64,000 bases of DNA from positions 1 through 64,000 of IMG/VR virus record IMGVR_UViG_3300044796_000662. One strand, 5' to 3'. The translations under genes and the position numbers were made by a program. Shown here piece after piece: positions 6,036 to 43,486 of the stretch; within the stretch, counting starts at the first letter, position 1; each line of letters starts with the position of its first letter. The notes below the pieces were generated by a model. The model was not told the DNA's origin, did no database searches, and was given only the letters and a program-made list of their open reading frames with translations.

Positions 6036-6449
6036 ATGCCAAGTGAGACGTTCGAATCCCGCCAGGAGATGGACAGGCGGGCCCAGTCCCTTCAAGAGCA
6101 AGGCGACCGTGTGCTTGTGGACGATGACCCCGACTCGGGTGTTCTCGGCTACAACGTGCTGGCCATCGCAGGTCGCGAGAGCACCAAGCTTCGGCACTAC
6201 TTGTTCGGGTTCGGGCTGACGCCCACCGTGCAGGTAGCCGAATCCGTCGAGGAGTTCCTCACCTGGATTCAGAGGCACGAGAAGCACTTCCGCATCCGGT
6301 CGAACGCTTCTCGCGAACGACAGATCGGCATCGTGTGCTTCTGTGAGGCTTTTCAGCGCCGGTCCCTGGTCTTCCGGCTCGCGGTAGAGAAAACCCGTCA
6401 GGCGCCCCCTGGGGCACTGGCAGAACTCGTCCGCCTCACGTCGGTCTAG
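6036..6449 (+). CDS. hypothetical protein
   Basis: ORF. Confidence 0.6.
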   Translation: MPSETFESRQEMDRRAQSLQEQGDRVLVDDDPDSGVLGYNVLAIAGRESTKLRHYLFGFGLTPTVQVAESVEEFLTWIQRHEKHFRIRSNASRERQIGIVCFCEAFQRRSLVFRLAVEKTRQAPPGALAELVRLTSV

Positions 6450-6982
6450 TCGTCGTCATCCGTGGACATGAGCCGCTTCCAGGCGGTGTCCTTGGGCTCG
6501 GACCGTTTCCTGGTCTCGTTCGGGAGCGACTCCTGCGCCTCCGGATCGTAGTGCCTGTGCAGAAGCACGGTTCCCCCGAACTCGACGATCTCGCCCATCA
6601 AGAAGTGCTGGACGGCGCTCTCGTTGTACGGCCCCACGAACACGAACGAGTTGGGCGACGAGTGCTTGACCACGACAAGGATCATCCGCTTGTGCTTCAT
6701 GAGCACCGTGTCGAACATCGGCGCGATGTAGCAGAAGAACTCCTCGTTGCGCCGGCGATTTGGCGACAAGCGTGTCTGCCGCATGATCGAGCCGTGACCA
6801 GAGTCCCACTCGACTGCGGGGTCTTGCTTGTCCCGAAGGACAGGACGAGAGGAACTTCCGAGCCCAACCCGGATGACGAAAGGCTCCGTAGACTCCATCG
6901 GCCGCACGGTCGTGAGGACGATGGACTTCGGCAGCGTGTCGTAGTCGATGTGCGGGCCAGAGCCTACGAGGTGGATGATCAT
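6446..6982 (-). CDS. hypothetical protein with C-terminal TAWKRLMSTDDDD tag
   Basis: ATGA overlap start. Shared tail motif. Confidence 0.65.
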   Translation of the reverse strand: MIIHLVGSGPHIDYDTLPKSIVLTTVRPMESTEPFVIRVGLGSSSRPVLRDKQDPAVEWDSGHGSIMRQTRLSPNRRRNEEFFCYIAPMFDTVLMKHKRMILVVVKHSSPNSFVFVGPYNESAVQHFLMGEIVEFGGTVLLHRHYDPEAQESLPNETRKRSEPKDTAWKRLMSTDDDD

Positions 6983-7215
6983 TCGTCGTCCCCGTCCATG
7001 GTTGGGGCGAGGTCCATTTGGCGGCGACGCTCCGCCTCGAAGAGAACGCCAAGGGCCTTCACTTCGGCCGTCGTCATCCACTCTGACTTGCACTTGGAGC
7101 AGGTGCGGATCGGGAAGGTCTCCGGGACCGTGCATAGGACCCCGCGGTACTTCCGCGTACGGCCGGCGACGCAGACCACGGTGATCTCACCGCCGCATTC
7201 TGCGCAGGACTTCAT
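6979..7215 (-). CDS. YgiT/MqsA-type zinc-finger protein
   Basis: 'MKSCAECGG...RTCSKCKSEWM'. Confidence 0.65.
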   Translation of the reverse strand: MKSCAECGGEITVVCVAGRTRKYRGVLCTVPETFPIRTCSKCKSEWMTTAEVKALGVLFEAERRRQMDLAPTMDGDDE

Positions 7216-7685
7216 CACGCCTCTGCGACCTGGCGCTGCGGCCGGCGGTTGATGTGCTCTAGCCACCACGTGAGCTTCTTCGTGTTGCGGTCCCAGAAGT
7301 ACCAGGTGCGCCGGGGTTTCATCGCGAAGAAGAGCGTCCAGGCGCGGTCCTTGAGCAAGTCCACCCTGTGGTAGTCCTCGCCCTTGATGAAGTTCAGCGA
7401 GAAGGGGAGCACGGGTCGGGTCACTACCCGCGAGCCGAACCGCCGCTCCTCGATGTAGCCGCCCGTCAGGATGAGCGAGACCGATGTCTCCCACGGGTGG
7501 CTGTGCAGCTCTGGTTCGGCGTCCCCGCTCACGAACAGGTGGAGGAACAGGTTGTACGGGCGGTCCTCCCGACCGAGGAGGTAGTACCGGACGAGATACG
7601 GCTCACCGTCAGGTCGAGGAATGACCTTCTTGGGGAACCTCGCCGCCACCCTCTCGCAGATCGCTTCGATCAACCGCCCGATCAT
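7215..7685 (-). CDS. phage cupin-like protein
   Basis: 'LFLH.F..GD....LHSHPW...S.IL.GGY.E' and 'DYHRVDL...AWTLF'. Confidence 0.7.
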   Translation of the reverse strand: MIGRLIEAICERVAARFPKKVIPRPDGEPYLVRYYLLGREDRPYNLFLHLFVSGDAEPELHSHPWETSVSLILTGGYIEERRFGSRVVTRPVLPFSLNFIKGEDYHRVDLLKDRAWTLFFAMKPRRTWYFWDRNTKKLTWWLEHINRRPQRQVAEA

Positions 7686-7878
7686 GCCCGTCATCTACAC
7701 CGGACACGCACGCATCACAGACCACCATGCCGGAAAGTCCTAGCCCGACCGCTTCGACCTCGATCGCGATGGCCGTTCCGTCCGTGAAGAAGAACCGCCA
7801 GACGTTGACGGCGCGGGTGTCGATGCGCTTGATGGTCTTGCCGACGAAGTCTCGCGGCTTGGGGTTACGATGTGACAT
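7609..7878 (-). CDS. hypothetical protein
   Basis: ORF with AGGAG upstream. Confidence 0.5.
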   Translation of the reverse strand: MSHRNPKPRDFVGKTIKRIDTRAVNVWRFFFTDGTAIAIEVEAVGLGLSGMVVCDACVSGVDDGHDRAVDRSDLREGGGEVPQEGHSST

Positions 7879-7887
7879 GGGGCTCCT

Positions 7888-8730
7888 TCATGGCGTCCGG
7901 GGTTCGACCTTCGTAGCCCACCACTGGTAGGCTGCGTTCGCCCACGCATCGAGCGCTTCAGGTACGTCATCGAGGCCGGGGTAGGCGTTGACTTCCAGAA
8001 GGTGCGCTGTGTCCCCGTGCATGAGGAAGTCCACGCCAGCGATCTGGAGGTCGAGCCTTTGCAGAAGCGCGCTGGTCCGCTCGATGAGGTCGGGTGTGAA
8101 GTCGTTGGCGAGCTTCAGCACCTTCGTCGTCCGGACGTTCTTGCGCCAGTCCTCGCTCTCGTAGCGAAGGTGGTAGAAGTGCCCGCCGATGATGAGGATG
8201 CGTTCGCTGCGACCCTCGAAGAAGGGCTCCACGATCCCCTCGAAGGTTCCCCGCAGCACGTCCCCGTTGCCCCCTTCGCGGAAGTCCAGAAGAGAGACGC
8301 CTTCTCCGCAATGCACGGCGCCTTCCTTGACGACCACGCGGTCCTTCAGGCCGAAGTCCTCGCCCTTGGGAATGAAACCCCGCCGAACCACGTCCAGCTT
8401 GCGCGGGCGGTCGGCGGCCATCGCCATCGCCAGCGACACCGCACGGTCATCGTGGGGCAGCGTACGGCGAACATCGGGGAACGTCGGGGTGTCCGACAAC
8501 GCGAGAGCCCGGCGTGCGGCGGGCACGTGATCGTTGAAGTAGTAACCGTGGTAGATGATACCATCCGGCTTGAGCCAGTGGTTCATGATCCGGGCGCTCT
8601 CCACGTATGTCTGGCCCCCGTGCGAGAGGATGCGTGGAACGTTGGGGTAGACGGTGAAGTTCGCGTCGATCCTGCCCCGAAGACGTTCGAGCAGGGGGTC
8701 CTCGATCCCGATCACGATGAGCTGGCGCAT
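7888..8730 (-). CDS. ATP-grasp (RimK-like) protein
   Basis: 'VVVKEG..HCGEG', 'WRKNV', 'IAGVDFL...LLEVNAYPG'. Confidence 0.75.
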   Translation of the reverse strand: MRQLIVIGIEDPLLERLRGRIDANFTVYPNVPRILSHGGQTYVESARIMNHWLKPDGIIYHGYYFNDHVPAARRALALSDTPTFPDVRRTLPHDDRAVSLAMAMAADRPRKLDVVRRGFIPKGEDFGLKDRVVVKEGAVHCGEGVSLLDFREGGNGDVLRGTFEGIVEPFFEGRSERILIIGGHFYHLRYESEDWRKNVRTTKVLKLANDFTPDLIERTSALLQRLDLQIAGVDFLMHGDTAHLLEVNAYPGLDDVPEALDAWANAAYQWWATKVEPRTP

Positions 8731-8785
8731 TGTACCTAACTAGTACACCGACTCGGTGTACTAGAACAAGAGGAGACCAACCCCC

Positions 8786-11231: not shown

Positions 11232-11234
11232 GCT

Positions 11235-26916: not shown

Positions 26917-28413
26917 ATGCCTCAAGATCGTCCGGCCATTGGTGAGACTTGGGAGATCCCCGATCCCTACGGAAGGGTCACGAGGGGAATCGTCTCGGAG
27001 GTCACCCCGACGATGGTTGTCCTCGTAGCCCTCACGGGTGCGCGCCTGCGCGTGCCCGCTGGACGCTTTCCAACTCAGTGGCGTTTCGCTGCTTCTCCCC
27101 CAGTGACGAGCATCAACTGTCGCTGCGGACGGCCTGGCATCCTGCGCTACACGCGAGGCGTGAGCCCGGACTTCGTGTGCCCGAAGCACCTTCCCGTGGG
27201 GGAGATCGCGACGCTGCACACCCCAGGGACACCAGTCACAGAACGTGCTGCACCCCCAAAGAACATTATCCAGTGCCCTCAGTGCGGCAACGCGGATCCT
27301 GTCGAGGATGCACGCATCCGGCACATCGGGACTCTGGAGCGCGGCGAGACCGGATGGTGGACTTGCACCATGTGCAGCTCACGCTGGGGTCTCATCGCCG
27401 AGCCGGCCAACGAGACGGACAATCGAACGCGCTGGTACTACGAGGCGCTTCGAGACCTCCACCACACGATGGACGAGCACAACGTCGAGATCACCACCAT
27501 CGAGATGAGCCGCTCCGCCTGGAACGCGATCTCGGCCCTCGTCTCCCCCGACTTCACGACCAACGGCGAAGAGCCCAACTCCGGGATGGAGATCGCTCGC
27601 CTGTTCGACATCCCGGTCAAGATGATCGCCTCGCTCATGGACGGGGCGATTCTCCTTCGCGCCCGCAACGCCCCCGCAGGGAGCGTCGTCTCTCCGGGTC
27701 GCAAGCCCGTCCAGAAGATCGGCGGCGTTGGGGGTCGTGCAGGGGTCGTAGGGGAGAGCACGCGGCCTCGCGACCAAACGATGCTCGGGGCGCTTGAACG
27801 CCTCTACGAGACCGACCGGGTGTCCCGAAGGACGCTTCTTGACGCGATGCGTCTACCGGAAGCGCCCCCTCCCGAGGTTCTGCCCACACCTACCCCTATC
27901 CCCGTGGAACCGCCGCCCGTGCTCCTCGAAAAGGTGTCGAACGCCGTGCGTGACCAGCGAAAGCCCAAGGCCGGTGACCGCTTCACGAGTCGCAGGACGG
28001 GCAAGACCGTCGATGTTCTGCGCATCGAGGAGAGGGACGGAATGTGGGCCGTCGCGCTCCAGGAGTCCTCGTACGGCAAGGACACCCTACCAAACTCCCC
28101 GACCATCCTGTGGGCCAACGACTTCGTAGCCGAGTACGTCCCCTTCGGATCGAGCGCTCGTCAACCAGAGCCCGAACCCGTGGCCCCGCTCAACATCAAC
28201 GTGTCTGCCGGCGAGGAATGGTACAGCGCGGAGCACAACGAGTACGTGACCGTGGAGAGCCTCGACCTGCGCAAGATGAAGGCGGTCGCCCGCGGTGCCT
28301 CGACGGGCAAGCTGCGCAACATCCACCTGGACGACTTCAACGACGAGACCAAGTGCAAGCGCATCGTGCGCACCACCGCCCATCGGCGGCTCATGGGTGA
28401 CGACGAATACTGA
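26917..28413 (+). CDS. multidomain hypothetical protein with zinc ribbons and C-terminal TAHRRLMGDDEY tag
   Basis: Long ORF with CxxC pairs. Confidence 0.75.
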   Translation: MPQDRPAIGETWEIPDPYGRVTRGIVSEVTPTMVVLVALTGARLRVPAGRFPTQWRFAASPPVTSINCRCGRPGILRYTRGVSPDFVCPKHLPVGEIATLHTPGTPVTERAAPPKNIIQCPQCGNADPVEDARIRHIGTLERGETGWWTCTMCSSRWGLIAEPANETDNRTRWYYEALRDLHHTMDEHNVEITTIEMSRSAWNAISALVSPDFTTNGEEPNSGMEIARLFDIPVKMIASLMDGAILLRARNAPAGSVVSPGRKPVQKIGGVGGRAGVVGESTRPRDQTMLGALERLYETDRVSRRTLLDAMRLPEAPPPEVLPTPTPIPVEPPPVLLEKVSNAVRDQRKPKAGDRFTSRRTGKTVDVLRIEERDGMWAVALQESSYGKDTLPNSPTILWANDFVAEYVPFGSSARQPEPEPVAPLNINVSAGEEWYSAEHNEYVTVESLDLRKMKAVARGASTGKLRNIHLDDFNDETKCKRIVRTTAHRRLMGDDEY

Positions 28414-28570: not shown

Positions 28571-28984
28571 ATGGCGGACTCCGTGGGAACAGTGAAGAAA
28601 ATCCAGCAGAAGCCGAAGCGCAGCAAGAGCGTGACCCGTCACTTTGGGCTTGCGCTCCGGAAAATGCGCGAGGCCAAAGGAATGCGCCTGCTCGACCTGG
28701 CCGAGCACTTGGACGTGAGCTTGCCATACCTCTCGGACGTCGAGCGCGGAAGACGTGAGCCTCTCTCCAATGACCGCATCAAGCTAGCGGCGCTGCACCT
28801 CGAAGGCGACGCCCTCTTGCTCATCGAGGAAGCGATCCGCGACCGTGGCTTCGTCACCCTCCCGATCGACGACCGCGACAACTTGCGGGTCAAGGCCGCG
28901 ATGATGCTCGTCGTCGCCCTGCCGGATGCCGGCGATGACGTCGTGCGCAAGATCATCAACACGCTGAAGGCTTCCACCGCCTAG
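28571..28984 (+). CDS. XRE-family HTH protein
   Basis: 'FG..LRKMRE.KG..L.DLA..L.VS.PYLSDVERGRR'. Confidence 0.88.
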   Translation: MADSVGTVKKIQQKPKRSKSVTRHFGLALRKMREAKGMRLLDLAEHLDVSLPYLSDVERGRREPLSNDRIKLAALHLEGDALLLIEEAIRDRGFVTLPIDDRDNLRVKAAMMLVVALPDAGDDVVRKIINTLKASTA

Positions 28985-29775
28985 AACGTGAGCACGTCGG
29001 TCACGCGCGGGTACCCGTACGCCGCGTGACCCGTGCGGACGAGCAGGTTCGGTGACCGTTCGTAGCGCCCTGCGCTGTGCGTGTGTCCGCAGAAGACCGT
29101 GAACTCCACATCGGGGTTCGCGCCCGTGACCTCGTCGAGCATCTCGCCCATCGAGCGGTTGCTCATCCAGGGCAAGAAGTTTTTGTCGGACATCTGCCCC
29201 TGGTGCCAGGTCGCTTGCGCGTACGGGGGCACGTGCGTGGCGAAGAGGATGCGCTTGTAGCCTTGAGCGACCGCCGCTTCGAGTAGAATGCGGGCCTCCT
29301 CTGTGAACGCGTCAGCGATCTCCCGCACTGTCGTGATGATCTCCTCCTGCGAGCATCCGAGCAGCTCTCGAATCGTCATGAAGTCGCTCAGCACGACATT
29401 CGACCGCTTGGGGTCGCCGAGCCGAGCATCGTACCACCCGTCGTGCCCCACGAGCGCGACGCCCGGTGCCAGCTCCACGGTCCCGGCCTTGGGCAGCCAG
29501 CGGGCCTTGCCCGCCATCTCCTCGGCCTTCACCCGCATGCCCACGATCGAGCCCCTGTACGCGTCGTGGTTGCCGAGGACGAAGTAGACCGGCGCGCCCA
29601 CCCCTTCGGCGAACGACTCGATGAGCGTGTTGAAGTCCGGATACTCCCCAATGTCGCCGGTCACGAGCACAGCACCAAGGTCAGGGATCGCCTCTCGGAC
29701 CTTCAGTCCGAAGTCCCTGGGGCCTTCAGTGTCCAGGAAGTTGAGGTGCGGGTCAGTAATCCAGGGAAGTTGCAT
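28981..29775 (-). CDS. calcineurin-like metallophosphoesterase
   Basis: 'TDPHL', 'TGDI', 'LGNHD', 'THVPP', 'CGHTH'. Confidence 0.92.
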   Translation of the reverse strand: MQLPWITDPHLNFLDTEGPRDFGLKVREAIPDLGAVLVTGDIGEYPDFNTLIESFAEGVGAPVYFVLGNHDAYRGSIVGMRVKAEEMAGKARWLPKAGTVELAPGVALVGHDGWYDARLGDPKRSNVVLSDFMTIRELLGCSQEEIITTVREIADAFTEEARILLEAAVAQGYKRILFATHVPPYAQATWHQGQMSDKNFLPWMSNRSMGEMLDEVTGANPDVEFTVFCGHTHSAGRYERSPNLLVRTGHAAYGYPRVTDVLTF

Positions 29776-30286: not shown

Positions 30287-30853
30287 ATGGCGACCCAAGG
30301 CTACGACCCTCTTCTCAAGCTGGCACAGATCTTCTGGGGCACAGGAACACTCACGCCAGAGCAGATCGATCTAGCACGCATCTCGGTCATGGAATCCACG
30401 AGGGTCAACGATCCCTTGCAGAACTACCGTGAGCCGGAGCTGGATCAGCCCCCGCTCGGCCGCTTCATGAAGGAGCAGGAGAGAGTTACTGGTAGGCACG
30501 GCCTCACCCTCGTTGAGGCGGACCTGGCACACGGTCTCCTCATCTGCATTCAAACCGGCGCCTACCACGATTCCCACCACCCGCCGCCGCTGGGGATCTA
30601 CGACCACTTCAAGGGAGGCGTCTACCTCATCACGGGGTACTCTCGATGGGCGAGCGGCAACGGCGAGCCGGTCATCGAGTACCTCTCGATGCTCTTCGGC
30701 ACGAAGCACACTCGTCTCCTCGATCAATGGATCGAGGTCGTGAAGTGGCCGGATGGCCGCTACCGCAGTCGCTTCATCTACCGCGGCGCCAACCTCACGG
30801 TAGCGGAACCGTCCTTCAAGGTCCCAAGCCCCACTCATCCGCCCGAGGGGTGA
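30287..30853 (+). CDS. DUF1653-like domain protein
   Basis: 'GIYDHFKGGVY...E.VIEY...R..RF'. Confidence 0.7.
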   Translation: MATQGYDPLLKLAQIFWGTGTLTPEQIDLARISVMESTRVNDPLQNYREPELDQPPLGRFMKEQERVTGRHGLTLVEADLAHGLLICIQTGAYHDSHHPPPLGIYDHFKGGVYLITGYSRWASGNGEPVIEYLSMLFGTKHTRLLDQWIEVVKWPDGRYRSRFIYRGANLTVAEPSFKVPSPTHPPEG

Positions 30854-31584
30854 TGTACGGCGCGGCCATCCTTACCAATCCGGCCCCCGGGTGGTCCTTT
30901 CGGGTTGCCGAAGAAGTCCTGCCCGGCGCGGCCATCATTGCCTTCGGCAACGACTTCGTGGGCATCGAAGGACGACTTGCGGATCTTGAGGTACGGGACA
31001 CGTTCGTGGTCTTGGCGCCGCGAGCGTTCTGTTTCGCGTTCTTCTTCCGCAAGCCGCTCAGCGAGCCGACCGTGACCGACCAGTTGTCCGCGACGAGCAC
31101 GGGCGCTGTCGCTATCGACGAGTGCCGAGTGCATCCCGTTTCGGGAGACGACTACGGCCGCAGTTCCCGCAACGCCAAGGGTACCAACAACGCCCACCAG
31201 GGGTTCAAAGGCAAGGCGTTCAAAATCAAGGAGCGCCACGAGGACTACGCTCACAGCGACGGACGCTGGCCGCCGAACCTGTTGCTCATGCACGGACAGG
31301 ACTGTGGGACCGTCTGTACATCGGACTGCCCCGTGAAACTCCTTGACACACAGAGCGGGGAGTTGACGAGCGGCATGATGGTGCCCGGACAGAAGCGCGT
31401 GCAGACCAACGGCGCTGGGGGCTATCACGGCGGCTTCGACGAGACCGCCTCGCTTCGGGGGTCATATGGGGACACGGGAGGGGCCAGCCGCTTCTTCCCG
31501 CAGTTCTACAACGAGTCCGAGGTACTCGACTGGTTCCGCACCCTGGTCTTGCCGCCGGGCCTGACTCTGTACGAGGGCACATGA
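30853..31584 (+). CDS. DNA-methyltransferase-derived protein lacking catalytic motifs (copy 1)
   Basis: 'RKPLSE.TV...TGA..IDECRV', 'GRWPPN', 'DTGGASRFF'. No DPPY or FxGxG. Confidence 0.65.
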   Translation: MYGAAILTNPAPGWSFRVAEEVLPGAAIIAFGNDFVGIEGRLADLEVRDTFVVLAPRAFCFAFFFRKPLSEPTVTDQLSATSTGAVAIDECRVHPVSGDDYGRSSRNAKGTNNAHQGFKGKAFKIKERHEDYAHSDGRWPPNLLLMHGQDCGTVCTSDCPVKLLDTQSGELTSGMMVPGQKRVQTNGAGGYHGGFDETASLRGSYGDTGGASRFFPQFYNESEVLDWFRTLVLPPGLTLYEGT

Positions 31585-32276
31585 TCTTCTCCGGAGCGAT
31601 CCTCAAGGGGAGCTGGCAGCCGGTCGATGTCCTGCCCGGCTCCTACGTGGCGCTACTCACGTCCGACGAAAGGGCGTCCATCGAGGCCAGGACTGCGGGC
31701 CTTCATCTGCGGGACACGATGCTGCTCCTCGGACCAGCGCAATCCGTGAGCTTCGCCTTCCTCTTCCGAGCCCCCATGTTGAGCACCGTGGTGGAGAACG
31801 TCATCGCCCACGGGACGGGAGCGCTGCACATTGACGCTTGCCGCATCGCCGGGGACATGAGCGAGTTCTTCTCGAAGACCGGCAAGCCGAGGTCTGGCAT
31901 GGGCCACGCGAAGGGCTACGGCATGGGGGATGGCTATGGGGGCGACCGGGCCAATCCGCCACACAGCGCCGGACGGTGGCCCTCGAACCTGGCGTTCATC
32001 CAATCGACCGAATACACGGCCTCTCTTGACCAACAGAGCGGCGATAGGCCCTCAACCCTCACGGGAAGGGCTGACCCACTGGCCGCCCATGGGCACCCCT
32101 CACAGGCCGTGACCGACTCTTGGTTCAGCGGAGGCGCCGCAAAGGACACCCTCGTGTATGCGGACGCTGGGGGCGCCTCTCGCTTTTTCTTGCAGTTCGC
32201 CAACGAGGTCGAGTTTCTCTCCTGGCTGCGGTGCCTTCTCGTGCCCGAGGGTGCCCCTATCTTCGAGGTGCCGTGA
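31581..32276 (+). CDS. DNA-methyltransferase-derived protein lacking catalytic motifs (copy 2)
   Basis: 'TVVENV..HGTGALHIDACRI', 'GRWPSN', 'DAGGASRFF'. Confidence 0.65.
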   Translation: MIFSGAILKGSWQPVDVLPGSYVALLTSDERASIEARTAGLHLRDTMLLLGPAQSVSFAFLFRAPMLSTVVENVIAHGTGALHIDACRIAGDMSEFFSKTGKPRSGMGHAKGYGMGDGYGGDRANPPHSAGRWPSNLAFIQSTEYTASLDQQSGDRPSTLTGRADPLAAHGHPSQAVTDSWFSGGAAKDTLVYADAGGASRFFLQFANEVEFLSWLRCLLVPEGAPIFEVP

Positions 32277-33165: not shown

Positions 33166-33771
33166 ATGCCCACCGGGATCCCAATGCCGCTGTACGTCCT
33201 ACCTTCGGCAAGCGTCGGACTAAGGACACAAGCACCCGCCGCCGGGCACGCGTGGAAGCTCTACTACCCGATGGGGGACGACCAGATGGTGCAGCGCTAC
33301 CGGCTTCACTACGAGTCCCTCCGCAGTGACCCACACGTCGAACGAGTCGATTGCTACGACGAGGTGGAGCACTTGCCGGGTGTGGCGATCCTGTCCGTGC
33401 TGTTCAAGGGCGGGTGGTGTGAGCCGGAACAGATTGGACTGCGCCATCTGAACCTGGTCTACAAGGAGCCGCGCCTCCACATCGAGCCCGCCGCTCGACG
33501 TCTTCAGATGCGCACCACTCCCGCTCTCCCGCACGCCCCCGAGTGGGTCAAGACCGGGTCCTGGGTGCGGAACATCGCCGGTACGGTCTTCGAGATCCTT
33601 GGGGTCGAGCGCAGCGTAGGGGAGATCCCGGTGGTCATGCTCCGGGAGAACCACGAGACACAAGTGCTCACCCTGCTCCTGGACGCGGTTCTCGCCAGCT
33701 TCAGTCCGGCCCCCAAGCCCAAGGGACCGCTGACCGCGCATCAACGTCTCATGAGCGACGACGAATACTGA
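33166..33771 (+). CDS. hypothetical protein with C-terminal TAHQRLMSDDEY tag
   Basis: ORF. Confidence 0.7.
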   Translation: MPTGIPMPLYVLPSASVGLRTQAPAAGHAWKLYYPMGDDQMVQRYRLHYESLRSDPHVERVDCYDEVEHLPGVAILSVLFKGGWCEPEQIGLRHLNLVYKEPRLHIEPAARRLQMRTTPALPHAPEWVKTGSWVRNIAGTVFEILGVERSVGEIPVVMLRENHETQVLTLLLDAVLASFSPAPKPKGPLTAHQRLMSDDEY

Positions 33772-34738: not shown

Positions 34739-35046
34739 TCGTCGAAGACCGAGGCGATGGCCCGTGCCGTCGCCTCGTCAATCTCCAGGTCCACGATCCC
34801 GGCCTTGAGGCGCATCTCGATCTGTGCGATGCGCCCCGAGGGCTTGCGGGTGATGCTGACGACCTTCATGAGCTTGGTCGTCTCCTGCGTCACCCGCTCG
34901 GGCTCCACCTTGGCCTCGATGACCTCTCCTTCGTGCAGCTTCTTGCGGATGACTTTGGCCTTGCCGTTTCCCATGGTGGGCGGCTTGGGGGCGAGCGCTG
35001 CGTCGTCCATGAACTCCTCGGGGGTGGGATCGTCGGCGGGAATCAT
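34735..35046 (-). CDS. hypothetical protein
   Basis: ORF. Confidence 0.6.
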   Translation of the reverse strand: MIPADDPTPEEFMDDAALAPKPPTMGNGKAKVIRKKLHEGEVIEAKVEPERVTQETTKLMKVVSITRKPSGRIAQIEMRLKAGIVDLEIDEATARAIASVFDD

Positions 35047-35537
35047 TCGGTCTCCATGAGCGCTTGCCAGATGGTGCGGGCGTCTACCGGAGGCAGGGGC
35101 ACCTCAGGACTAATACACAAGTCGCCCTTGAGTGTCACGGGGCGCCATGTGTTGTTTGGGTACTCGCGCAACCAGTCGCTGAAGAGCACCCGTTCGAACT
35201 GCATTCTTCTGTCCGGCCACCACACGTAGTCGATCTCTCGATCCACTTCGTTCAGGCATTCGCCAAGAGCGTCGGGATCAGCCCCCGCAGCTTCCATGAT
35301 CCAGAGCATGCCCTTGCCCCCGGTCCAGGGACCAGACCAGGTCGTGATCGTGTAGAGGGCGGCACCGTTGACCAAGATCTGACGGCCGCACCATCGTGCT
35401 CGACCGAGCAGCTTGTCCGCGCTGTTCAACATCCCTCGGGCTTCAGCTTCATCCCTCGCGAGCACCAGCGAATGCGTGCCGTCTTGCGATGCTTCGATCG
35501 CTGCGGCAATGACTTTCCCCACGTAATCGCGCGTCAT
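35043..35537 (-). CDS. hypothetical protein
   Basis: ORF ending TIWQALMETE. Confidence 0.6.
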   Translation of the reverse strand: MTRDYVGKVIAAAIEASQDGTHSLVLARDEAEARGMLNSADKLLGRARWCGRQILVNGAALYTITTWSGPWTGGKGMLWIMEAAGADPDALGECLNEVDREIDYVWWPDRRMQFERVLFSDWLREYPNNTWRPVTLKGDLCISPEVPLPPVDARTIWQALMETE

Positions 35538-35984
35538 CTAGTCGTCCTCGGTCTCCATGAGACGGCTCCACGCGCTCTTGGGCTCCGCGTCGGCCTTCGG
35601 TGTGATCTCTTGCACCGTGGGGATGACCTGCGTGGTCCTCCAGCGCAGGTACGGCACCTTCTCGTACTGCCCCCTCTTGTTGGAAGCGTAGACGTACGAC
35701 GGGTTGCCCACGTCGTCGTTGGGCTTCAGGTCAGGCTCGGGGAAAAAGAACACCCATCCCCTCGACTTCAAGCGCACCTGCCACGGGTTGGGGCTGGCGA
35801 GGATGAAGCTCTGTGCCTCGTGCGTGGTGACCCCCGCGTTACGCACGAGGTTCTCCACGGTCATGAGCTTGGCTCGCGAGACGATGGCGTCCGTTTCGCT
35901 GGCCAAGGGCGTGATCACGAGCACACCCTTGCCTTCGGCGGCGTCCGCCATGGCTGCGATGATGGTCTCGTCGGGGATCGGCAT
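35538..35984 (-). CDS. hypothetical protein with C-terminal SAWSRLMETEDD tag
   Basis: ORF. Confidence 0.65.
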   Translation of the reverse strand: MPIPDETIIAAMADAAEGKGVLVITPLASETDAIVSRAKLMTVENLVRNAGVTTHEAQSFILASPNPWQVRLKSRGWVFFFPEPDLKPNDDVGNPSYVYASNKRGQYEKVPYLRWRTTQVIPTVQEITPKADAEPKSAWSRLMETEDD

Positions 35985-36487: not shown

Positions 36488-36847
36488 ATGCCGAACGACA
36501 AGGTGACTTGCCCGAGCTGCGGAGATGTTCACGACGATCTGTTCTCTGATGAGCTGGTCGCCCTCTGGCGTAAGGTCCAGAAGACCGAAGACGAGCAGAC
36601 CCGGTTCGAGCTGATGGTCAAGCTTGCGGGGCAGTTCGTCGAGGACATCTCGGACACCGACGAGGGGGTCGGCGAGACCCTTCACGGTCTCATCGCCAAC
36701 GTCATCGAGAGCCGCTTGGCCTTCGAGAAGAACTCCCTCGCTCTTGCGCGCGTGCTCATGCGCTCTCTGCCCCACCTCGTCACGGAGGGGGATGGAGATG
36801 AGCCGACCACACATCGGACCCCTGCTACGAAGGCGAAGGCGAACTAG
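36488..36847 (+). CDS. hypothetical protein
   Basis: ORF with N-terminal CPSC. Confidence 0.65.
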   Translation: MPNDKVTCPSCGDVHDDLFSDELVALWRKVQKTEDEQTRFELMVKLAGQFVEDISDTDEGVGETLHGLIANVIESRLAFEKNSLALARVLMRSLPHLVTEGDGDEPTTHRTPATKAKAN

Positions 36848-37824
36848 CCTTCGTCGTCGTCTCGAAGGTGATCCCAAGCACTCGGCTTGCTCGCGTACTC
36901 GGTTGCGCGAGCAAGAGCCGAAGGGCGAACCTCGACAGGAGCGGGACGTCCGGCCGCCTGACGTTCGGCCACCTGCTCACGGAAGCTCGGGGGAAGGCGG
37001 CTCTGCGCGATCTGTCGGGCTTCTTCCCGAGACATCATCTGACGCGCTGGACGAGGAGCCTCGGTCACGACCGGGTAGCGCCCCGCCTGTCCGACCTGGA
37101 TACGAGGTCCCCCGATGGGGGCACGCTGCGGGGGACGGTACCCCGCCAGCTCGGCATCCATCTCGTTGTCGAAGCTGATCTCGTTGTTCGAGGCCATGCG
37201 AGACATGCCCATGGCCGCCATGACCTGGCGCTCCTCGGCTGCTTCCTGCGCCCAGATCGAGTCGAGGTTACCACTGGACGATCCGTAGCTCGGGTCGAGC
37301 AGCTCTTCGGCACCCTCTGTGTTCCAGAGTCCCTGAAGCGACTCGACCGCGAGGCCGCCACCCTGCGAGGCAACGCGAGAGGTGCCGGGCGTCGGATCCG
37401 CAAGCATCTGCTCGATGTCCGCGTCAATGGACGCCGAGTTGCCCCAGAAGTCCATGTCGATCTCGAACTGACCCCGTGCCGGCTGCCGCGGTGCAGGCGC
37501 ACTGGCCATGCGCTGTTGGACCGGAGCAGGTCGCTGCGGAGGAAGCGCGATGCGTTGCTGTTGCTGGACCGGGGCTGGCCTCTGCACGGGCGCCAGCGGG
37601 TTGTTGACCCGAAGGCCACCCTGGACGGGTCGAGGCGCTACAGGGGCGGCAGGGGGCAGACCCGCTGCCTGCCGGATGGTCATGGGCTGTGGCCGCTTCG
37701 GCGCACGGCTTGCCGCGAGCAGTTGCTTCAACTGGCCCTCGGGGCAACCGCAAGCGCCGGGCACACCATCCACATCGTAAACGGCGGCAGTACAGGTACG
37801 GCAGTAGTCGATCTGGACAGGCAT
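36844..37824 (-). CDS. Pro/Gln/Ala-rich protein with C-terminal SAWDHLRDDDEG tag
   Basis: Low-complexity ORF. Confidence 0.7.
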   Translation of the reverse strand: MPVQIDYCRTCTAAVYDVDGVPGACGCPEGQLKQLLAASRAPKRPQPMTIRQAAGLPPAAPVAPRPVQGGLRVNNPLAPVQRPAPVQQQQRIALPPQRPAPVQQRMASAPAPRQPARGQFEIDMDFWGNSASIDADIEQMLADPTPGTSRVASQGGGLAVESLQGLWNTEGAEELLDPSYGSSSGNLDSIWAQEAAEERQVMAAMGMSRMASNNEISFDNEMDAELAGYRPPQRAPIGGPRIQVGQAGRYPVVTEAPRPARQMMSREEARQIAQSRLPPSFREQVAERQAAGRPAPVEVRPSALARATEYASKPSAWDHLRDDDEG

Positions 37825-37902
37825 AACAGTTCCCTCTAAGGAGGGTTGATAAGCGGTTTCGTCGGTGTAAAGGGGCTACATGCGCACCCCCAAGAGGAGC
37901 TG

Positions 37903-38193: not shown

Positions 38194-38197
38194 GAGC

Positions 38198-40373: not shown

Positions 40374-40404
40374 GTTCTGAGGGTACTACAAGAGAATCCG
40401 TGTG

Positions 40405-41856
40405 TCACCGGCTCTGGGAGAACTGCTTCAAGTGCTCGGGAAGCTCCGGTTTTTCGGCCACGCCTCCGGACATGATCTTCTCGAAGCGCTCCGTGATCTT
40501 GGGGTCCCAAGTCGTGTGCGCGGATGTGATGCCGAAGTTCGTCAACGCGAACAACTCCGCGAACTGCTCCGAGAGTGCTCCGAAGCCATCCTTGGCGCTG
40601 TACGGAGTCGTGTTCCACTCAGACCGGGCGAAGTCCACGGGGACGTGATGCTTGTGGTCGTAGCGGTGCCCCAGCTCGTGGACGATGATGTACTCGAAGC
40701 TACCGTACGACTTGCCCGAACGCGAAAGCACAGCAGGGGTTGCGCGAACGAGCAACGTGTCCGAGTCCGACTTGTACTTGCCGCTTGCGTGCGAGCCGCC
40801 GAAGTCCGCAGGGCTCGCGAGGACTACCTTGAGGCCGCCCGTGAGGGCTCCCTTGCGCCAGCCCTTCAAGTCCTTGAAGATCGCATCGAGGCGTCCAGCG
40901 TACAGGGCGAGCTTCTTCTCGTCGAAGCCGACGCTGTTGATGAAGACGTTGCCGTCGAGCTTCAGTTCTTTCGGAACGACCTTGCCGCCCTCGGAAGAGA
41001 AGTAGCGCGTGAGGGCGTCGAGCTGCGGTTCGATCTTCGACCATGCAGCCTCAATGGTGTCCCGAACACCCTTCTCTCGCTCGGGCGTGGCCATGTCGTG
41101 CATGTTGATGCCGGACTTGAGCCACCAGTGCAGCTTGAGCATCTCCTCCTTGAGCGCCTTCTGACCCTTCGGAGTCTTGGACGAGAGGATGGCGAAGTTG
41201 TCGGTCATCCAGTCCGCGATCTCAGTGCCTTTGGCTACCTGCAACGGGGAGTCCGCGAACAGTTCCTTCATCTTGCGCTGGAAGTCGTTGGCAAGAGAGG
41301 CGGTCACATAGCTTCGTGCCGCAACGCGCAGGGACAACGTCTCGTCTTCCTGCTCCGCCTCCAGGGGCAGCTTGACCACGATACGGTTCGCCCCCTTGTC
41401 GCCGCCCCAGACCACGATCTCATCGACGGTCCAGGTGACGGGGTCGATGGGTTGGTCAGCCGGCTGAGGTCCGCTGTCCTCGTACGCAAGGGTCACGTGC
41501 GGGCGGTACTCCGGGTACTTCTTGCTGTACTCAATGCCGGCGGCGTCGAAGGCAGCGCAGAGGTTCTTGCGGAACTCGTGCAGCGCCGGGGACTCGATGA
41601 GGGCGACGATAGGCACACCATCGTCCCCGGACTTGAAGGACGAGATGACCTTCGTGCTCACCTGGAACGGAGCTGTCCTACGAGCCGTGACGTATGCCAC
41701 GATGGCCGCCTGCGCCACCTGTTCGATGGGCACGTCCTTGCCAAGGTGGTGGATCGTGACGTGGTGGTGGTCCTCAGGCTCTAGCTTGCCTGGCACCTCG
41801 TACTGACCGAGGACATCACTGACCTCGGTAGGAACCTTGAGCCCGATGAACGCCAC
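40405..41856 (-). CDS. Acb1-like 2H phosphoesterase fused to zincin-like metallopeptidase
   Basis: Two HxT motifs, 'HHVTI' and 'YRPHVTLAY'. Linker 'LRVAARSY'. 'IVHELGHRY...EQFAELF'. Confidence 0.8.
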   Translation of the reverse strand: MAFIGLKVPTEVSDVLGQYEVPGKLEPEDHHHVTIHHLGKDVPIEQVAQAAIVAYVTARRTAPFQVSTKVISSFKSGDDGVPIVALIESPALHEFRKNLCAAFDAAGIEYSKKYPEYRPHVTLAYEDSGPQPADQPIDPVTWTVDEIVVWGGDKGANRIVVKLPLEAEQEDETLSLRVAARSYVTASLANDFQRKMKELFADSPLQVAKGTEIADWMTDNFAILSSKTPKGQKALKEEMLKLHWWLKSGINMHDMATPEREKGVRDTIEAAWSKIEPQLDALTRYFSSEGGKVVPKELKLDGNVFINSVGFDEKKLALYAGRLDAIFKDLKGWRKGALTGGLKVVLASPADFGGSHASGKYKSDSDTLLVRATPAVLSRSGKSYGSFEYIIVHELGHRYDHKHHVPVDFARSEWNTTPYSAKDGFGALSEQFAELFALTNFGITSAHTTWDPKITERFEKIMSGGVAEKPELPEHLKQFSQSR

Positions 41857-41989
41857 GCTCCTACCGGCACACAAGAAGGCTAGTAGCGGCGGCCTCCACG
41901 GCATACGCCACGGATGTAGCTGGGATTTTACGGGACATGCTGGACCCCCAATACACCGGGCCAGGATTTCCTTTTACCCCCACTGGGCT

Positions 41990-42241
41990 GTGGAAGCACT
42001 GACTCGACTCTGTGAAGCTGTACGAACGCTCTCCCCTCAGGGAGAAGTGCGGTTCAGGGGTGTCCCTGATCGCGAAGACTATTGGGTGTGCAACGTGTGG
42101 GTCAGCGACGTGATCCTGTTTCAGTCGGCCGCCGGCCCGTTGGACGAGGTCATCGACCAGGTTCTCTCGAAGATTAAGGCCATGTCGCAGCGGGCTCTTC
42201 GTATTCTGGGACCTGACGGCAACCCACCCGACACGGTGTAA
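41990..42241 (+). CDS. hypothetical protein
   Basis: ORF. Start uncertain. Confidence 0.5.
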   Translation: MEALTRLCEAVRTLSPQGEVRFRGVPDREDYWVCNVWVSDVILFQSAAGPLDEVIDQVLSKIKAMSQRALRILGPDGNPPDTV

Positions 42242-42253
42242 GATCCGGCGCCG

Positions 42254-42589
42254 ATGGCGCCAACCGATCCTCCGGAACCGTTCATCATCATCCATGGCCG
42301 CCGTTCAGGCATGAGCGCCATGAGTGCCCTGATCAATGGCGCGCTGCGCGAGTTCACAGACGCGTTGAGCCTCGGCCCGTGGTGGAACGAGTCGTTCAGC
42401 TCGAATGAGATCCGTGTCCTTCACAAGGTCTTGCAACCACCCGCCAAGCACAAGAAGAAGCCGAAGAGGCGTCGTAGACGCAACAACCCGCGACCGAATC
42501 GCCGGCGCAAGGCACAGAAGCTACGCGCTGCGAAACAGCGCCCGACGTGGTATCAACACATCACAGATGGGGATGAAGGCCATGAGTGA
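42254..42589 (+). CDS. basic hypothetical protein with degenerate acidic tail tag
   Basis: ATG 13 nt after CGGTGTA. Ends TWYQHITDGDEGHE. Confidence 0.6.
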   Translation: MAPTDPPEPFIIIHGRRSGMSAMSALINGALREFTDALSLGPWWNESFSSNEIRVLHKVLQPPAKHKKKPKRRRRRNNPRPNRRRKAQKLRAAKQRPTWYQHITDGDEGHE

Positions 42590-43025
42590 CGACGACCAGA
42601 GACTTCCAGAAGGACGACCGGGTGAACTGGTCATCGGCACATCACCTGAGCGCATCCTCGTCCGCATCGCTGCCGATGGCACGTTGACCTACGGCCCCGA
42701 GTACACGCCCGACGAAGCCGCACAGGTCTTCTGGCAGGCTCTCGCTCGTCAGCGTGAGGGCGGCGAGGAGAAGATGGTGCTGCTCGCCCACGTCGAGAAG
42801 CTACTTGCACGCATCGGGGAGCAAGACTTGCGGACCGAGACGGCTCGGATGCAGGCCAGCGAGACCAAGAGCGCGCACGACGAGTTCCAGGCAGAACGCG
42901 CCACGGGCCAGCTCGAAGTTCTCGTACACGAGCTGATCGAACTGGCCCGTGGCATCGCCCTTCGTGACCGGGACAATGCCAAGGCTGCACCGCCCAAGGG
43001 CGCTCCACCGAGCACCCTGAACTAG
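42582..43025 (+). CDS. hypothetical protein
   Basis: ORF. Confidence 0.65.
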   Translation: MSDDDQRLPEGRPGELVIGTSPERILVRIAADGTLTYGPEYTPDEAAQVFWQALARQREGGEEKMVLLAHVEKLLARIGEQDLRTETARMQASETKSAHDEFQAERATGQLEVLVHELIELARGIALRDRDNAKAAPPKGAPPSTLN

Positions 43026-43486
43026 TATTCGTCGTCGCCCATAAGGCGCCGCCAGGCCGTGAGGATGATGCCCTCCTTGAGCCTGGCCTTCGCGTGCTTG
43101 ATGACGCGTTCGCAAGTCTTGACGTCGAAGCGGCCGATGTGCGCGGTCTCCTTCGTCATCCCGAGCTTCTGTGCGAGCCACTTGTAGGCGTCGTCCCGGC
43201 TCATCTTCCCGGTCTTCCAGAGCTGGTCGAAGATCTCGTGAGCGCGCATGCGGGCCTCACGTGTGAGCGTGTCCCCCGGGGTGCCCATCGGCGAACCGTC
43301 CGGGTGTGCCCCGTGTGTTCCACGGCACGTCGGGTAGCGTGCGCACCCGTAGAAGTGGCCGGTAGGCAGAGCGATGAGGCGCATCTTGGACATGCCGCAC
43401 TCGCCGCAGGTGAGGTCATCCCTTTCGCCAGGGAACCGCGGTCCGACGTCTTCGAACCCGATGTCCTCGATCATCCCGGGGAGCAT
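43022..43486 (-). CDS. topoisomerase-type C4 zinc finger/DUF3268-like protein with TAWRRLMGDDEY tag
   Basis: 'CGECG...FYGCARYPTC', 'R..AH..FD.LWK...SR..AY.WLA..LG.....HIG.FD...C'. Confidence 0.8.
   Translation of the reverse strand: MLPGMIEDIGFEDVGPRFPGERDDLTCGECGMSKMRLIALPTGHFYGCARYPTCRGTHGAHPDGSPMGTPGDTLTREARMRAHEIFDQLWKTGKMSRDDAYKWLAQKLGMTKETAHIGRFDVKTCERVIKHAKARLKEGIILTAWRRLMGDDEY

What the first reader, a model, noticed from the sequence alone, without database searches (positions are those of the whole stretch)
6446..43486. Shared C-terminal tag [TS]A[WH]x[RH]LMxDDEY on otherwise unrelated proteins
Termini: TAWKRLMSTDDDD (6446), TAHRRLMGDDEY (28413), TAHQRLMSDDEY (33771), SAWSRLMETEDD (35538), SAWDHLRDDDEG (36844), TAWRRLMGDDEY (43022), and weaker TIWQALMETE (35043) and TWYQHITDGDEGHE (42589). 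It is an amphipathic helix plus acidic tail, usually after a Pro/Lys linker, on dispersed genes of both strands. Inference: a portable docking, localisation or degradation signal read by one phage or host partner (e.g. an AAA ATPase, a compartment-import factor or RNAP). I do not recognise it as a described motif.
Basis: partly seen in the sequence, partly recalled or inferred. Interest (0 to 1): 0.75.

Follow-up and report, generated by a model that had tools for sequence, protein, structure and literature searches.

The report
Shared C-terminal docking tag, huge phages
A clade of uncultivated huge phages attaches the same short C-terminal peptide, in a version specific to each genome, to between 8 and 45 or more otherwise unrelated small proteins, which points to a single still unidentified phage-encoded reader that handles up to about 10% of the phage proteome.

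Summary
Six ORFs in the window end in [ST]A[WH]x[RH]L[MR] plus an acidic tail, exactly at the stop codon. A profile of the six scores 26-30 bits; everything else in the 363-kb record scores 7.4 or less, and 50 shuffled proteomes 9.5 or less. The carrier bodies are unrelated and the codons differ, so selection acts on the peptide.

Of the two weaker claims, 35043 is a probable member and 42589 is not. Further members lie at 82653 and upstream of the window.

Relatives carry the same kind of tag in genome-specific versions:
- TVWDHLM: about 25 ORFs
- TLWDHLR: 45 or more
- SRFDLIG: 12
- TRFDRI: about 20

Orthologues carry their own genome's version or no tail, and most DUF3268 proteins elsewhere have none. 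Two outgroup phages have no tags.

The tag reads as an N-capped mini-helix after a Pro/Lys-rich linker, so it is a docking peptide for one co-evolving reader. There are 56 clade-specific core genes. Two stand out as candidates: a complete phage ClpX (my pick, about 0.3) and a second HK97-fold capsid/encapsulin-like protein (about 0.25). The one complex prediction gave no answer.

The parts
6446..6982 (-). Carrier 1, 178 aa, orphan protein. Tag TAWKRLMSTDDDD at 6449-6487, then the stop.
   Evidence: 28.8 bits. A 178-aa gene is also called at this place on the longer public contig. No Pfam or PHROG hit.
26917..28413 (+). Carrier 2, 498 aa, Cys-rich (zinc-ribbon-like) orphan. Tag TAHRRLMGDDEY at 28375-28410.
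   Evidence: 27.3 bits. The long start at 26917 is supported: residues 1-170 match a G003 protein that ends in a G003-like tail, TLFDYLKMDDF.
33166..33771 (+). Carrier 3, 201 aa orphan. Pro/Lys linker, then tag TAHQRLMSDDEY at 33733-33768.
   Evidence: 29.2 bits. No family hit.
35538..35984 (-). Carrier 4, 148 aa orphan. Tag SAWSRLMETEDD at 35541-35576.
   Evidence: 25.9 bits. Weak paralogue of the next gene, 35043-35537 (E 0.02).
36844..37824 (-). Carrier 5, up to 326 aa (start uncertain; my gene model starts at 37509). Pro/Gln/Ala-rich, low-complexity protein. Tag SAWDHLRDDDEG at 36847-36882. This is the most divergent tag here and looks like the version used by relatives G001 and G003.
   Evidence: 25.8 bits. 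Not recovered in the leave-one-out test.
43022..43486 (-). Carrier 6, 154 aa. Topoisomerase-type zinc ribbon plus DUF3268. Tag TAWRRLMGDDEY at 43025-43060.
   Evidence: Pfam PF11672 at 3e-28; 30.0 bits for the tag. Homologues carry another genome's version or no tail.
35043..35537 (-). Probable divergent member, 164 aa. Tail TIWQALMETE at 35046-35075.
   Evidence: Shares W..LMETE with its neighbour and weak paralogue 35538. It scores only with a profile that included it as a seed and not with the six-seed profile.
42254..42589 (+). Claimed weak member (TWYQHITDGDEGHE). Rejected.
   Evidence: No profile score. The ORF is not chosen by the codon-usage gene model.

Best explanation
What the comparative data show:
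- The peptide is a portable docking motif about 7 residues long. Its positions are a small polar N-cap (S/T/N/D), one variable residue, an aromatic residue (W/F/Y/H), usually D/E, then H/R/L, then an aliphatic residue (L/I/M). It is often followed by an acidic run and a terminal hydrophobic or aromatic residue.
- It sits at the extreme C-terminus behind a disordered Pro/Lys-rich linker.
- It is carried by many unrelated, fast-turning-over small accessory proteins and by one conserved Tudor-like core protein.
- It occurs throughout a clade of uncultivated huge phages, and every genome uses its own version.

What I infer: one co-evolving, phage-encoded reader binds it as a short N-capped amphipathic helix.

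The tag would tether its carrier to ClpX, most likely through the variable N-terminal zinc-binding domain, as the C-terminal XB peptide of SspB does. The carriers would then be one of two things:
- adaptors that hand bound host proteins to phage ClpX and host ClpP, or
- substrates themselves, cleared on a schedule.

The generic part (a real, selected, portable docking tag with one co-evolving reader) I hold at about 0.9. The ClpX assignment I hold at about 0.3.
For: Generic part:
- The six members are discrete (26-30 bits against 7.4 or less), all at the stop codon, and absent from shuffled proteomes.
- Synonymous codons differ between tags.
- C-terminal tags by genome: 25 in G001, 45 in the first 320 kb of G003 and 12 in G006; about 20 in G005; more in G004 and G008. 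De novo enrichment reaches P 4e-47.
- Position-specific counts fit a capping box.
- The linker is enriched in Pro (2.3-fold) and Lys (1.75-fold).
- The AlphaFold2 model of the core tagged protein has a confident beta domain (residues 1-144) followed by a disordered stretch (145-178) that ends in the tag.
- The tag follows the genome, not the protein body.

ClpX part:
- The gene at record 88778-90061 has the ClpX C4 zinc finger, AAA_2 and ClpB_D2-small domains. It also has a GYVG pore loop and an LGF tripeptide that I read as the ClpP-docking loop.
- ClpX is present in all 10 relatives tested and absent from both untagged outgroups.
- No ClpP gene was found in this record or in four complete relatives, so the conserved docking loop implies use of host ClpP.
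- The zinc-binding domain is the most variable part of ClpX, with indels, as a co-evolving receptor should be.
- The conserved tagged protein lies 6 kb from clpX in the same clade-specific block.
- Established knowledge, recalled rather than tested here: ClpX reads short terminal peptide tags, and its N-domain binds the C-terminal tail of the adaptor SspB. One enzyme can serve dozens of clients.
Against: - There is no direct evidence of binding. The only complex prediction (zinc-binding domain x2 plus a 24-residue tail) gave 'no answer'.
- 55 other clade-specific core genes share the same presence/absence profile. These include an AAA ATPase and a second HK97-fold protein, which offers an equally good analogy.
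- The tag resembles neither the SspB XB peptide nor ssrA-type degrons (comparison from memory).
- A few copies of the motif are internal, so a free C-terminus is not always needed.
- ClpX conservation and tag version both follow phylogeny, so their correlation is not independent evidence.
Confidence: 0.32

Rival explanations
1. Cargo-loading or capsid-targeting peptide. The tag would dock its carriers onto the clade-specific second HK97-fold protein (record 96193-97374, 393 aa, encoded directly after a 533-aa AAA ATPase). It would act like an encapsulin cargo-loading peptide or, with the opposite polarity, the T4 capsid-targeting sequence. Carriers would be enclosed in a phage-built shell, or packed into the virion and delivered to the next host as a ready-made set of small effector proteins.
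For: - The AlphaFold2 model (pLDDT 78) matches encapsulins and phage capsid proteins only. Foldseek against PDB: 7lis at E 3.9e-4, probability 1.0, with the top 50 hits nearly all encapsulins or phage capsid proteins. VIA-align: Z up to 7.5, with residues 176-382 covering whole encapsulin protomers. AlphaFold DB hits include 'phage major capsid protein' and protease-capsid fusions.
- The true major capsid protein is a different gene (record 214134-215015, PF05065), with no profile similarity to this one.
- The HK97-fold protein is present in all 9 tagged or related genomes tested and absent from both untagged outgroups.
- It diverges fast (27-48% identity), as a co-evolving receptor would. The true capsid protein is 92-97% identical and cannot track the tag versions.
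- Established knowledge: encapsulin cargo proteins are unrelated proteins that share a short C-terminal peptide behind a flexible linker, which is exactly this layout.
Against: - The fold match is middling (Z below 8, TM 0.26-0.39) and does not separate an encapsulin from a capsid vertex protein.
- The gene has no encapsulin Pfam hit, and cargo genes are not adjacent to it.
- Known encapsulins load a handful of cargo types, not 45.
- A stoichiometric shell offers few sites for so many clients.
- The tag sequence is unlike known cargo-loading peptides (from memory).
Confidence: 0.25
2. A different reader. Candidates are another of the 56 clade-specific core proteins (for example the 533-aa AAA ATPase at record 97376-98977, or proteins of the conserved block 81003-86558), or a variable host protein. 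Under the host-protein reading, the genome-specific versions would reflect different hosts.
For: - Phyletic profiling leaves 56 candidates.
- The AAA ATPase has a 270-residue N-terminal part of unknown function and a paralogue inside the window at 18941-20182.
- The core tagged protein has a Tudor/KOW-like N-terminal barrel. Its best structural matches are RNA-polymerase-binding domains of CarD and UvrD/PcrA (Z 6.5), which hints at a transcription-related hub.
- Hosts are unknown.
Against: - None of these proteins has a known peptide-reading function.
- Conserved bacterial hubs (beta clamp, SSB, RNA polymerase) bind near-universal motifs and would not drive genome-specific versions.
- The Tudor match is below the level the tool calls reliable.
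Confidence: 0.25
3. T4-type sliding-clamp-binding motif. The tag would be a relative of the C-terminal LDFLF motif that tethers T4 gp43, gp33 and ligase to the gp45 clamp.
For: - T4 gp43 ends in SLDFLFG, and the motif binds gp45 as an amphipathic helix (PMC6212786).
- The G006 version SRFDLIG is superficially similar in length, the Ser, the acidic residue, the hydrophobic residues and the terminal Gly.
Against: - The replicative polymerase here is family A, and neither it nor the helicases carry the tag.
- No clamp gene was recognised among the replication-region proteins scanned.
- One candidate of clamp-like size turned out to be an HK97 fold.
- Dozens of small orphan proteins are not a replisome.
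Confidence: 0.05
4. No function as a peptide. The match would be chance, a translated DNA or RNA signal at gene ends, or full-length paralogy.
For: None beyond the weak paralogy of 35538 and 35043 and three small paralogue pairs in G001.
Against: - Shuffled proteomes top out at 9.5 bits, against 26-30 for the real tags.
- Codons differ at synonymous and at Ser/Thr positions.
- Substitutions are conservative at the protein level.
- The bodies are unrelated.
- The motif sits on both strands and always in the coding frame, next to the stop.
Confidence: 0.01

Closest known systems
Encapsulin cargo-loading peptides (family 1 encapsulins)
   Same: A short conserved peptide at the extreme C-terminus, behind a flexible linker, on otherwise unrelated proteins. 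It is read by an HK97-fold shell protein and co-varies with it. A second HK97-fold protein exists here.
   Different: The sequence is unlike the Gly/Ser/Leu-rich peptides known from encapsulins (from memory). There are 8 to 45 or more carriers per genome rather than a few. Carrier genes are scattered, not next to the shell gene. The candidate shell has a 175-residue N-terminal extension and no encapsulin Pfam hit. The setting is a phage genome.
XB tail of the adaptor SspB, which binds the ClpX N-terminal zinc-binding domain
   Same: A folded domain, then a long disordered linker, then a short C-terminal peptide. A complete ClpX with a C4 zinc finger is encoded by every tagged genome tested.
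   Different: No sequence likeness to the XB peptide (from memory). Many carriers instead of one adaptor. ClpX is phage-encoded. Binding is not shown (one search gave no answer).
T4 capsid-targeting sequence on the hypervariable internal proteins
   Same: The only conserved element on a set of small, fast-evolving, otherwise unrelated phage proteins. It gives a plausible link to proteins delivered with the DNA.
   Different: The T4 signal is N-terminal and is cut off by the prohead protease (from memory). Here the signal is C-terminal, and no cleavage or virion location is known.
T4 gp45-clamp-binding motif (LDFLF; gp43 C-terminus SLDFLFG)
   Same: A short hydrophobic/acidic helix, mostly C-terminal, shared by unrelated proteins and read by one hub (PMC6212786).
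   Different: The carriers here are not replisome or transcription proteins, the polymerase is family A without the tag, and no clamp was found.
Poxvirus ankyrin proteins with a C-terminal PRANC/F-box-like motif
   Same: A virus puts one C-terminal docking motif on many variable substrate-binding proteins to plug them into a degradation machine. This is the logic of the adaptor version of the ClpX model.
   Different: That is a eukaryotic ubiquitin system, its motif is a roughly 40-residue helical domain, and its carriers are paralogous repeat proteins. This is an analogy only (from memory).
Acidic C-terminal tips of SSB (DDDIPF) and T7 gp2.5/gp4
   Same: An acidic run ending in a hydrophobic or aromatic residue (DDEY, DEDL, DDLF) that docks onto partner proteins.
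   Different: Here the conserved core is the upstream capped helix. Many G003 tags have no acidic tail at all. A separate window protein (2528-2890) does end in DDADIPF.

Membership tests
Encapsulin cargo-loading peptide | Short conserved peptide at the extreme C-terminus behind a flexible linker, on unrelated proteins | tested here: met
   Nearly all tags lie within 8 residues of the stop: 8/8, 25/29, 45/51 and 12/12 of the profile hits at 12 bits or more in four genomes. The linker is Pro/Lys-rich and disordered in the model. Bodies are unrelated.
Encapsulin cargo-loading peptide | An encapsulin shell protein (HK97 fold, encapsulin sequence family) encoded with the cargo | tested here: inconclusive
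   A second HK97-fold protein exists and co-occurs with tags. However, it has no Pfam hit, the fold match does not separate encapsulin from capsid protein, and cargo genes are not adjacent.
Encapsulin cargo-loading peptide | Peptide binds the luminal face of the shell protomer | not testable with these tools
This needs co-expression or a peptide-shell model.
SspB-type ClpX-tethering (XB) peptide | A ClpX with an N-terminal C4 zinc-binding domain is present | tested here: met
   PF06689 at 4.3e-11, plus AAA_2 and ClpB_D2-small. The four Cys are invariant in 8 orthologues. ClpX is present in 10 of 10 relatives.
SspB-type ClpX-tethering (XB) peptide | Peptide binds the zinc-binding domain | tested here: inconclusive
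   The complex-prediction job scored 0.00 with the verdict 'no answer', which is neither support nor evidence against.
SspB-type ClpX-tethering (XB) peptide | The carrier is an SspB-fold adaptor, or the peptide resembles XB | tested here: not met
   The core tagged protein has no SspB Pfam hit, and its fold matches Tudor/KOW barrels rather than SspB. The tag is unlike the XB sequence (from memory).
ssrA-type C-terminal degron | Nonpolar Ala-rich last residues with a free carboxylate as the recognised element | tested here: not met
   The termini vary (DDEY, EDD, RET, IG, DPL). The conserved part lies 4-9 residues upstream of the end. A few copies are internal.
T4 gp45-clamp-binding motif | Present on the DNA polymerase and other replisome or late-transcription proteins; a clamp is encoded | tested here: not met
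   The family A polymerase, DnaB-like helicase and SNF2 helicase lack the tag. No clamp family hit among the replication-region proteins scanned. The genome was not searched exhaustively for clamps.
T4 capsid-targeting sequence | An N-terminal signal removed by the prohead protease; carriers found in virions | tested here: not met
   The signal is C-terminal. Virion content cannot be tested because no cultured member is known.
Ordinary paralogous gene family | Similarity extends over the whole proteins | tested here: not met
   BLASTP of the bodies without tails finds only 35538/35043 at E 0.02 in this genome and three small pairs in G001.

The most novel reading that the evidence does not exclude
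These phages run a private protein-sorting system. A genome-specific C-terminal 'address' would send a large, rapidly changing set of small proteins to a phage-built machine encoded in one clade-specific block (ClpX, an AAA ATPase and a second HK97-fold shell protein). Two versions are possible:
- The carriers are adaptors that feed host defence proteins to phage ClpX and host ClpP, which would be a bacterial-virus counterpart of viral hijacking of ubiquitin ligases.
- The carriers are cargo loaded into a capsid-like shell or into the virion for delivery to the next host.
Probability: 0.3. Interest if true: 0.92.

Novelty: new variant of a known kind. Interest (0 to 1): 0.8.

Why it matters
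Short terminal address peptides are known from encapsulins, microcompartments, the T4 head and ClpX adaptors. I found no report of one that marks 2-10% of a phage's genes and changes its wording from genome to genome. Searches for the motif strings and for phage ClpX or phage encapsulins returned nothing relevant.

- It gives a one-line rule for picking out a functionally linked set of otherwise unannotatable orphan proteins in huge phages.
- It predicts a single reader that can be fished out with a peptide.
- It offers natural, orthogonal tag/reader pairs that could be useful as tools.
- If the carriers are adaptors or delivered effectors, the tag is a direct handle on the anti-host arsenal of a large group of soil and freshwater phages that nobody has cultured.

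Tried and rejected
- Complex prediction of the ClpX zinc-binding domain (2 copies) with the 24-residue tail of carrier 33771 scored 0.00 with the verdict 'no answer'. It counts neither for nor against binding.
- An exact DNA pattern for T-A-[WH]-x-R-L-M-x-DDEY-stop found nothing in IMG/VR, because relatives use other versions. The first six-seed profile likewise missed G004-G006.
- Phyletic profiling cannot separate ClpX from the HK97-fold protein. Both are in every clade genome tested and in neither outgroup.
- The idea that the conserved tagged protein is an SspB-like adaptor was not borne out. Its fold is a Tudor/KOW-like barrel plus a second beta domain, with no significant PDB match.
- The record 96193 protein was tested as a possible DnaN-like clamp because of its size and its AAA neighbour. 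It is not a clamp; it has an HK97 fold.
- The gene just downstream of clpX ends in AVYRALDEDGLV. This is conserved only in G001 and looks like part of a folded domain, so I did not count it as a tag.
- The internal LWDHL in the G003 orthologue of the HK97-fold protein is not conserved in the other genomes.
- In outgroup LR745208, three proteins end in S[IV]L[DG]MF. This looked like a clamp motif, but two of the three carriers belong to an unknown paralogue family, not the replisome; the third was not placed.
- Pfam and PHROG scans of carriers and of the ten largest tagged proteins of the relatives found almost nothing: DUF3268 once and RlaP once.
- I did not run a covariation analysis of tag version against receptor columns over many genomes.

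Full report
**Setting.** The window is the first 64 kb of a 362,937-bp virus record with 63% G+C. The record is a fragment of a huge phage. The same proteins lie on public contigs of up to about 570 kb, and phage genes continue upstream of the window start. The large terminase finds no cultured close relative. The nearest database phages are an uncultured 485-kb genome (LR745208.1, 46% identity) and Tunturiibacter phage Tunturi_5 (28%). IMG/VR holds about 40 related contigs of 300-530 kb with terminases 55-70% identical.

**The observation.** All eight quoted termini translate as written. A strict pattern, [ST]A[WH]..L[MR], occurs 12 times in the six-frame translation of the whole record. The other six lie in short junk frames.

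- A profile of the six tails gives 25.8-30.0 bits for the six, all ending at the stop. Everything else scores 7.4 bits or less.
- Fifty shuffled proteomes never exceed 9.5 bits, and the real proteome has no internal hit.
- The bodies without tails are unrelated, apart from the adjacent pair 35538/35043 at E 0.02.
- Only carrier 43022 has a known domain: a topoisomerase-type zinc ribbon plus DUF3268.
- The tags use different synonymous codons, and Ser/Thr are encoded by unrelated codons, so the conservation is at the peptide level.
- Of the two weak claims, 35043 is a probable decayed member and 42589 is not supported.

**The tag is a property of the whole clade, with genome-specific wording.** Profile searches of ten related genomes found C-terminal matches in most of them. 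I fetched four relatives whole or nearly so and made a census that does not depend on gene calls.

| Genome | Tag version | C-terminal copies |
|---|---|---|
| G001 (closest; terminase 70%) | T[VI]W[DE]H[LI][LM] | 25 |
| G003 (first 320 kb) | [TND]LWDHL[RKT] | 45 |
| G006 | SRFD[LM][IM] | 12 |
| G005 | P[ST]RF[DE]R... | about 20 |

- In G003 the de novo C-terminal enrichment reaches P 4e-47.
- G004 shares the G003 wording. G008 uses [ST][LA]W[DE]R[LI]L followed by an acidic run and a terminal hydrophobic residue.
- Nearly all copies lie within 8 residues of the stop.
- An exact DNA pattern for KTLWDHL finds only big contigs of this clade in IMG/VR.
- The two outgroup phages show no C-terminal enrichment at all: 1 observed against 1.35 and 0.73 expected.

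**The tag follows the genome, not the protein.**
- None of the six window carriers has a homologue in G001. The carriers therefore turn over fast while the tag stays.
- Where homologues exist, they bear the local wording or nothing. The DUF3268 carrier ends in TAWRRLM here, SRFDLM in G006, TRFDRV in G005, and has no tail in G003.
- Among 39 database homologues, a handful of close ones have tag-like tails and about 33 stop right after the domain.
- The N-terminal part of carrier 28413 matches a G003 protein with a G003-like tail.
- One tagged protein is a core gene (record 82653). Its orthologues in G001, G003, G005, G006 and four database relatives all keep a tail in their own wording.
- Uniform tags within a genome and different tags between genomes are what a single co-evolving reader would produce.

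**Anatomy of the tag.** Aligned on the aromatic residue (position 0), the positions are as follows:
- Position -2 is S/T, or T/N/D/S in G003.
- Position -1 is typical of the genome (A, V/I, L or R).
- Position 0 is W/F/Y/H.
- Position +1 is D/E in most genomes.
- Position +2 is H, R or L.
- Position +3 is L/I/M.

S/T/N/D followed three residues later by D/E is the classical helix N-capping box. I therefore read the tag as a capped amphipathic helix of one to two turns that shows residues -1, 0, +3 and +4 on one face. This is an inference from the sequence.

The 18 residues before the tag are enriched in Pro (2.3-fold), Lys (1.75-fold) and Cys (2.4-fold). The Cys enrichment comes from small zinc-ribbon bodies. 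In the AlphaFold2 model of the core tagged protein, residues 1-144 are confident and residues 145-178 (linker plus tag) are disordered. In several genomes the tag runs on into an acidic stretch that ends in a hydrophobic or aromatic residue (DDEY here). In G003 most tags stop 2-4 residues after LWDHL.

**Who reads it?** The major capsid protein (record 214134-215015, PF05065) is 92-97% identical across genomes whose tags differ, so it cannot be the co-varying reader. Comparing five clade genomes with the two untagged outgroups leaves 56 clade-specific core genes. Many sit in one block (record about 75-99 kb) that also holds the core tagged protein. Two of the 56 have a relevant known function or fold.

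1. *A complete ClpX (record 88778-90061).*
   - It has the C4 zinc finger, the AAA_2 module, a GYVG pore loop and an LGF tripeptide that I read as the ClpP-docking loop.
   - It is present in 10 of 10 relatives and in neither outgroup.
   - Its zinc-binding domain is its most variable part.
   - No ClpP gene is found here or in four complete relatives, so it should work with host ClpP or alone.

2. *A 393-aa protein (record 96193-97374), encoded right after a 533-aa AAA ATPase.*
   - Residues 176-382 of its AlphaFold2 model match encapsulins and phage capsid proteins and little else. Foldseek gives E 3.9e-4 and probability 1.0; VIA-align gives Z up to 7.5; AlphaFold DB hits include 'phage major capsid protein'.
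   - It has no sequence-profile likeness to the true capsid protein and no Pfam hit.
   - It belongs to a small family found only on such large contigs.
   - It diverges fast, at 27-48% identity.

**Weighing the two.**
- *For ClpX.* It is by nature a reader of short terminal peptides. A phage that carries its own ClpX needs its own signals. A disordered C-terminal stretch ending in a tag is the layout both of ClpX substrates and of the adaptor SspB. One enzyme can serve dozens of clients.
- *For the HK97-fold protein.* It offers an equally exact analogy. Encapsulin cargo proteins are unrelated proteins with a short C-terminal peptide behind a flexible linker, and T4 marks its hypervariable internal proteins with a shared targeting sequence.
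- *Against the HK97-fold protein.* The very large number of different carriers, and a fold match that cannot tell a shell of its own from a capsid vertex protein.
- *Against ClpX.* No binding evidence. The one complex prediction gave no answer.

I put ClpX at about 0.3, the HK97-fold protein at about 0.25, another phage or host reader at about 0.25, and a T4-like clamp motif at about 0.05. T4 gp43 ends in SLDFLFG (PMC6212786), but the family A polymerase and the helicases here carry no tag, and no clamp was found. Chance, a DNA-level signal and paralogy are excluded.

**What the carriers might be.** They are small (median ORF 116-219 aa), mostly orphans and often Cys-rich. They sit in mixed-strand or arrayed accessory regions away from the structural module and are replaced quickly between relatives. 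That is the profile of host-takeover or anti-defence genes, but nothing here tests it. The N-terminal barrel of the core tagged protein resembles the RNA-polymerase-binding Tudor domains of CarD and UvrD/PcrA, though only at Z 6.5, so this is a lead and not a finding.

**Novelty.** Full-text searches for the motif strings, for phage ClpX and for phage-encoded encapsulins found no description of this tag. The principle of a shared terminal address peptide is known.

Noticed in passing
window 2528-2890 (+): A 120-aa protein ends in EGDDADIPF, a near copy of the bacterial SSB C-terminal tip (DDDIPF). It has no Pfam hit. One database DUF3268 homologue (P0058) also ends in DDDIPF.
   Followed up: partly
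record 214134-215015 (-), outside the window (L008:10134-11015): The 293-aa major capsid protein is 92-97% identical among clade genomes whose terminases are only 60-70% identical. It is 82% identical to the outgroup LR745208. This is an unusually frozen capsid protein.
   Followed up: partly
record 96193-98977 (-), outside the window (L002:12193-14977): A second HK97-fold protein with a 175-residue N-terminal extension is encoded directly after a 533-aa classical AAA ATPase. Both are clade-specific and lie far from the structural module.
   Followed up: partly
G005 280076-282358, G009 215750-218017, G010 277143-279434 (loci L116, L117, L123-L126): In three relatives the ClpX gene is a 777-795-aa ORF. 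It has an insertion of about 310 residues between the zinc-binding domain and the AAA module, near the Walker A region, which looks intein-like.
   Followed up: no
L257 12441-20846 (public contig upstream of the window start): The phage continues beyond the window. Genes there include ones with Pfam hits to ribosomal protein S12/S23, peptide chain release factor (PCRF/RF-1), CoaE and a cytidylyltransferase, as well as three further tagged genes.
   Followed up: partly
window 7888-8730 (-): Weak RimK-like ATP-grasp match (E 6e-4, below the Pfam cut-off). RimK-type enzymes extend acidic protein C-termini. The gene sits about 900 bp from carrier 6446-6982 (two small genes lie between) and has a homologue in G006 only. 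This is probably a coincidence.
   Followed up: no
window 61172-62647 (+), 40405-41856 (-), 28981-29775 (-), 18941-20182 (-): Nicotinamide phosphoribosyltransferase (PHROG 448, 2e-179); a protein with an RNA-ligase-like N-terminal part; a metallophosphoesterase; and an AAA ATPase paralogous to the one next to the HK97-fold gene.
   Followed up: partly
window 30853-32276 (+) and 49160-49888 (+); record 74747-75592 and 305521-308331: A paralogue family of unknown function. Its relatives in the untagged outgroup LR745208 end in S[IV]L[DG]MF[GA], a different recurrent C-terminal motif found on three proteins there.
   Followed up: partly
record 114295-118857 (-), L003:10295-14857: A 1520-aa core protein with a borderline match to the ubiquitin-activating enzyme E1 FCCH domain (29.0 bits against a cut-off of 29.5).
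   Followed up: no
G001 348469-349795 (-); G003 168837 (+): A few strong tag copies lie 70-230 residues before the stop of a long open frame. They may be gene fusions after loss of a stop codon, or true internal docking sites.
   Followed up: no
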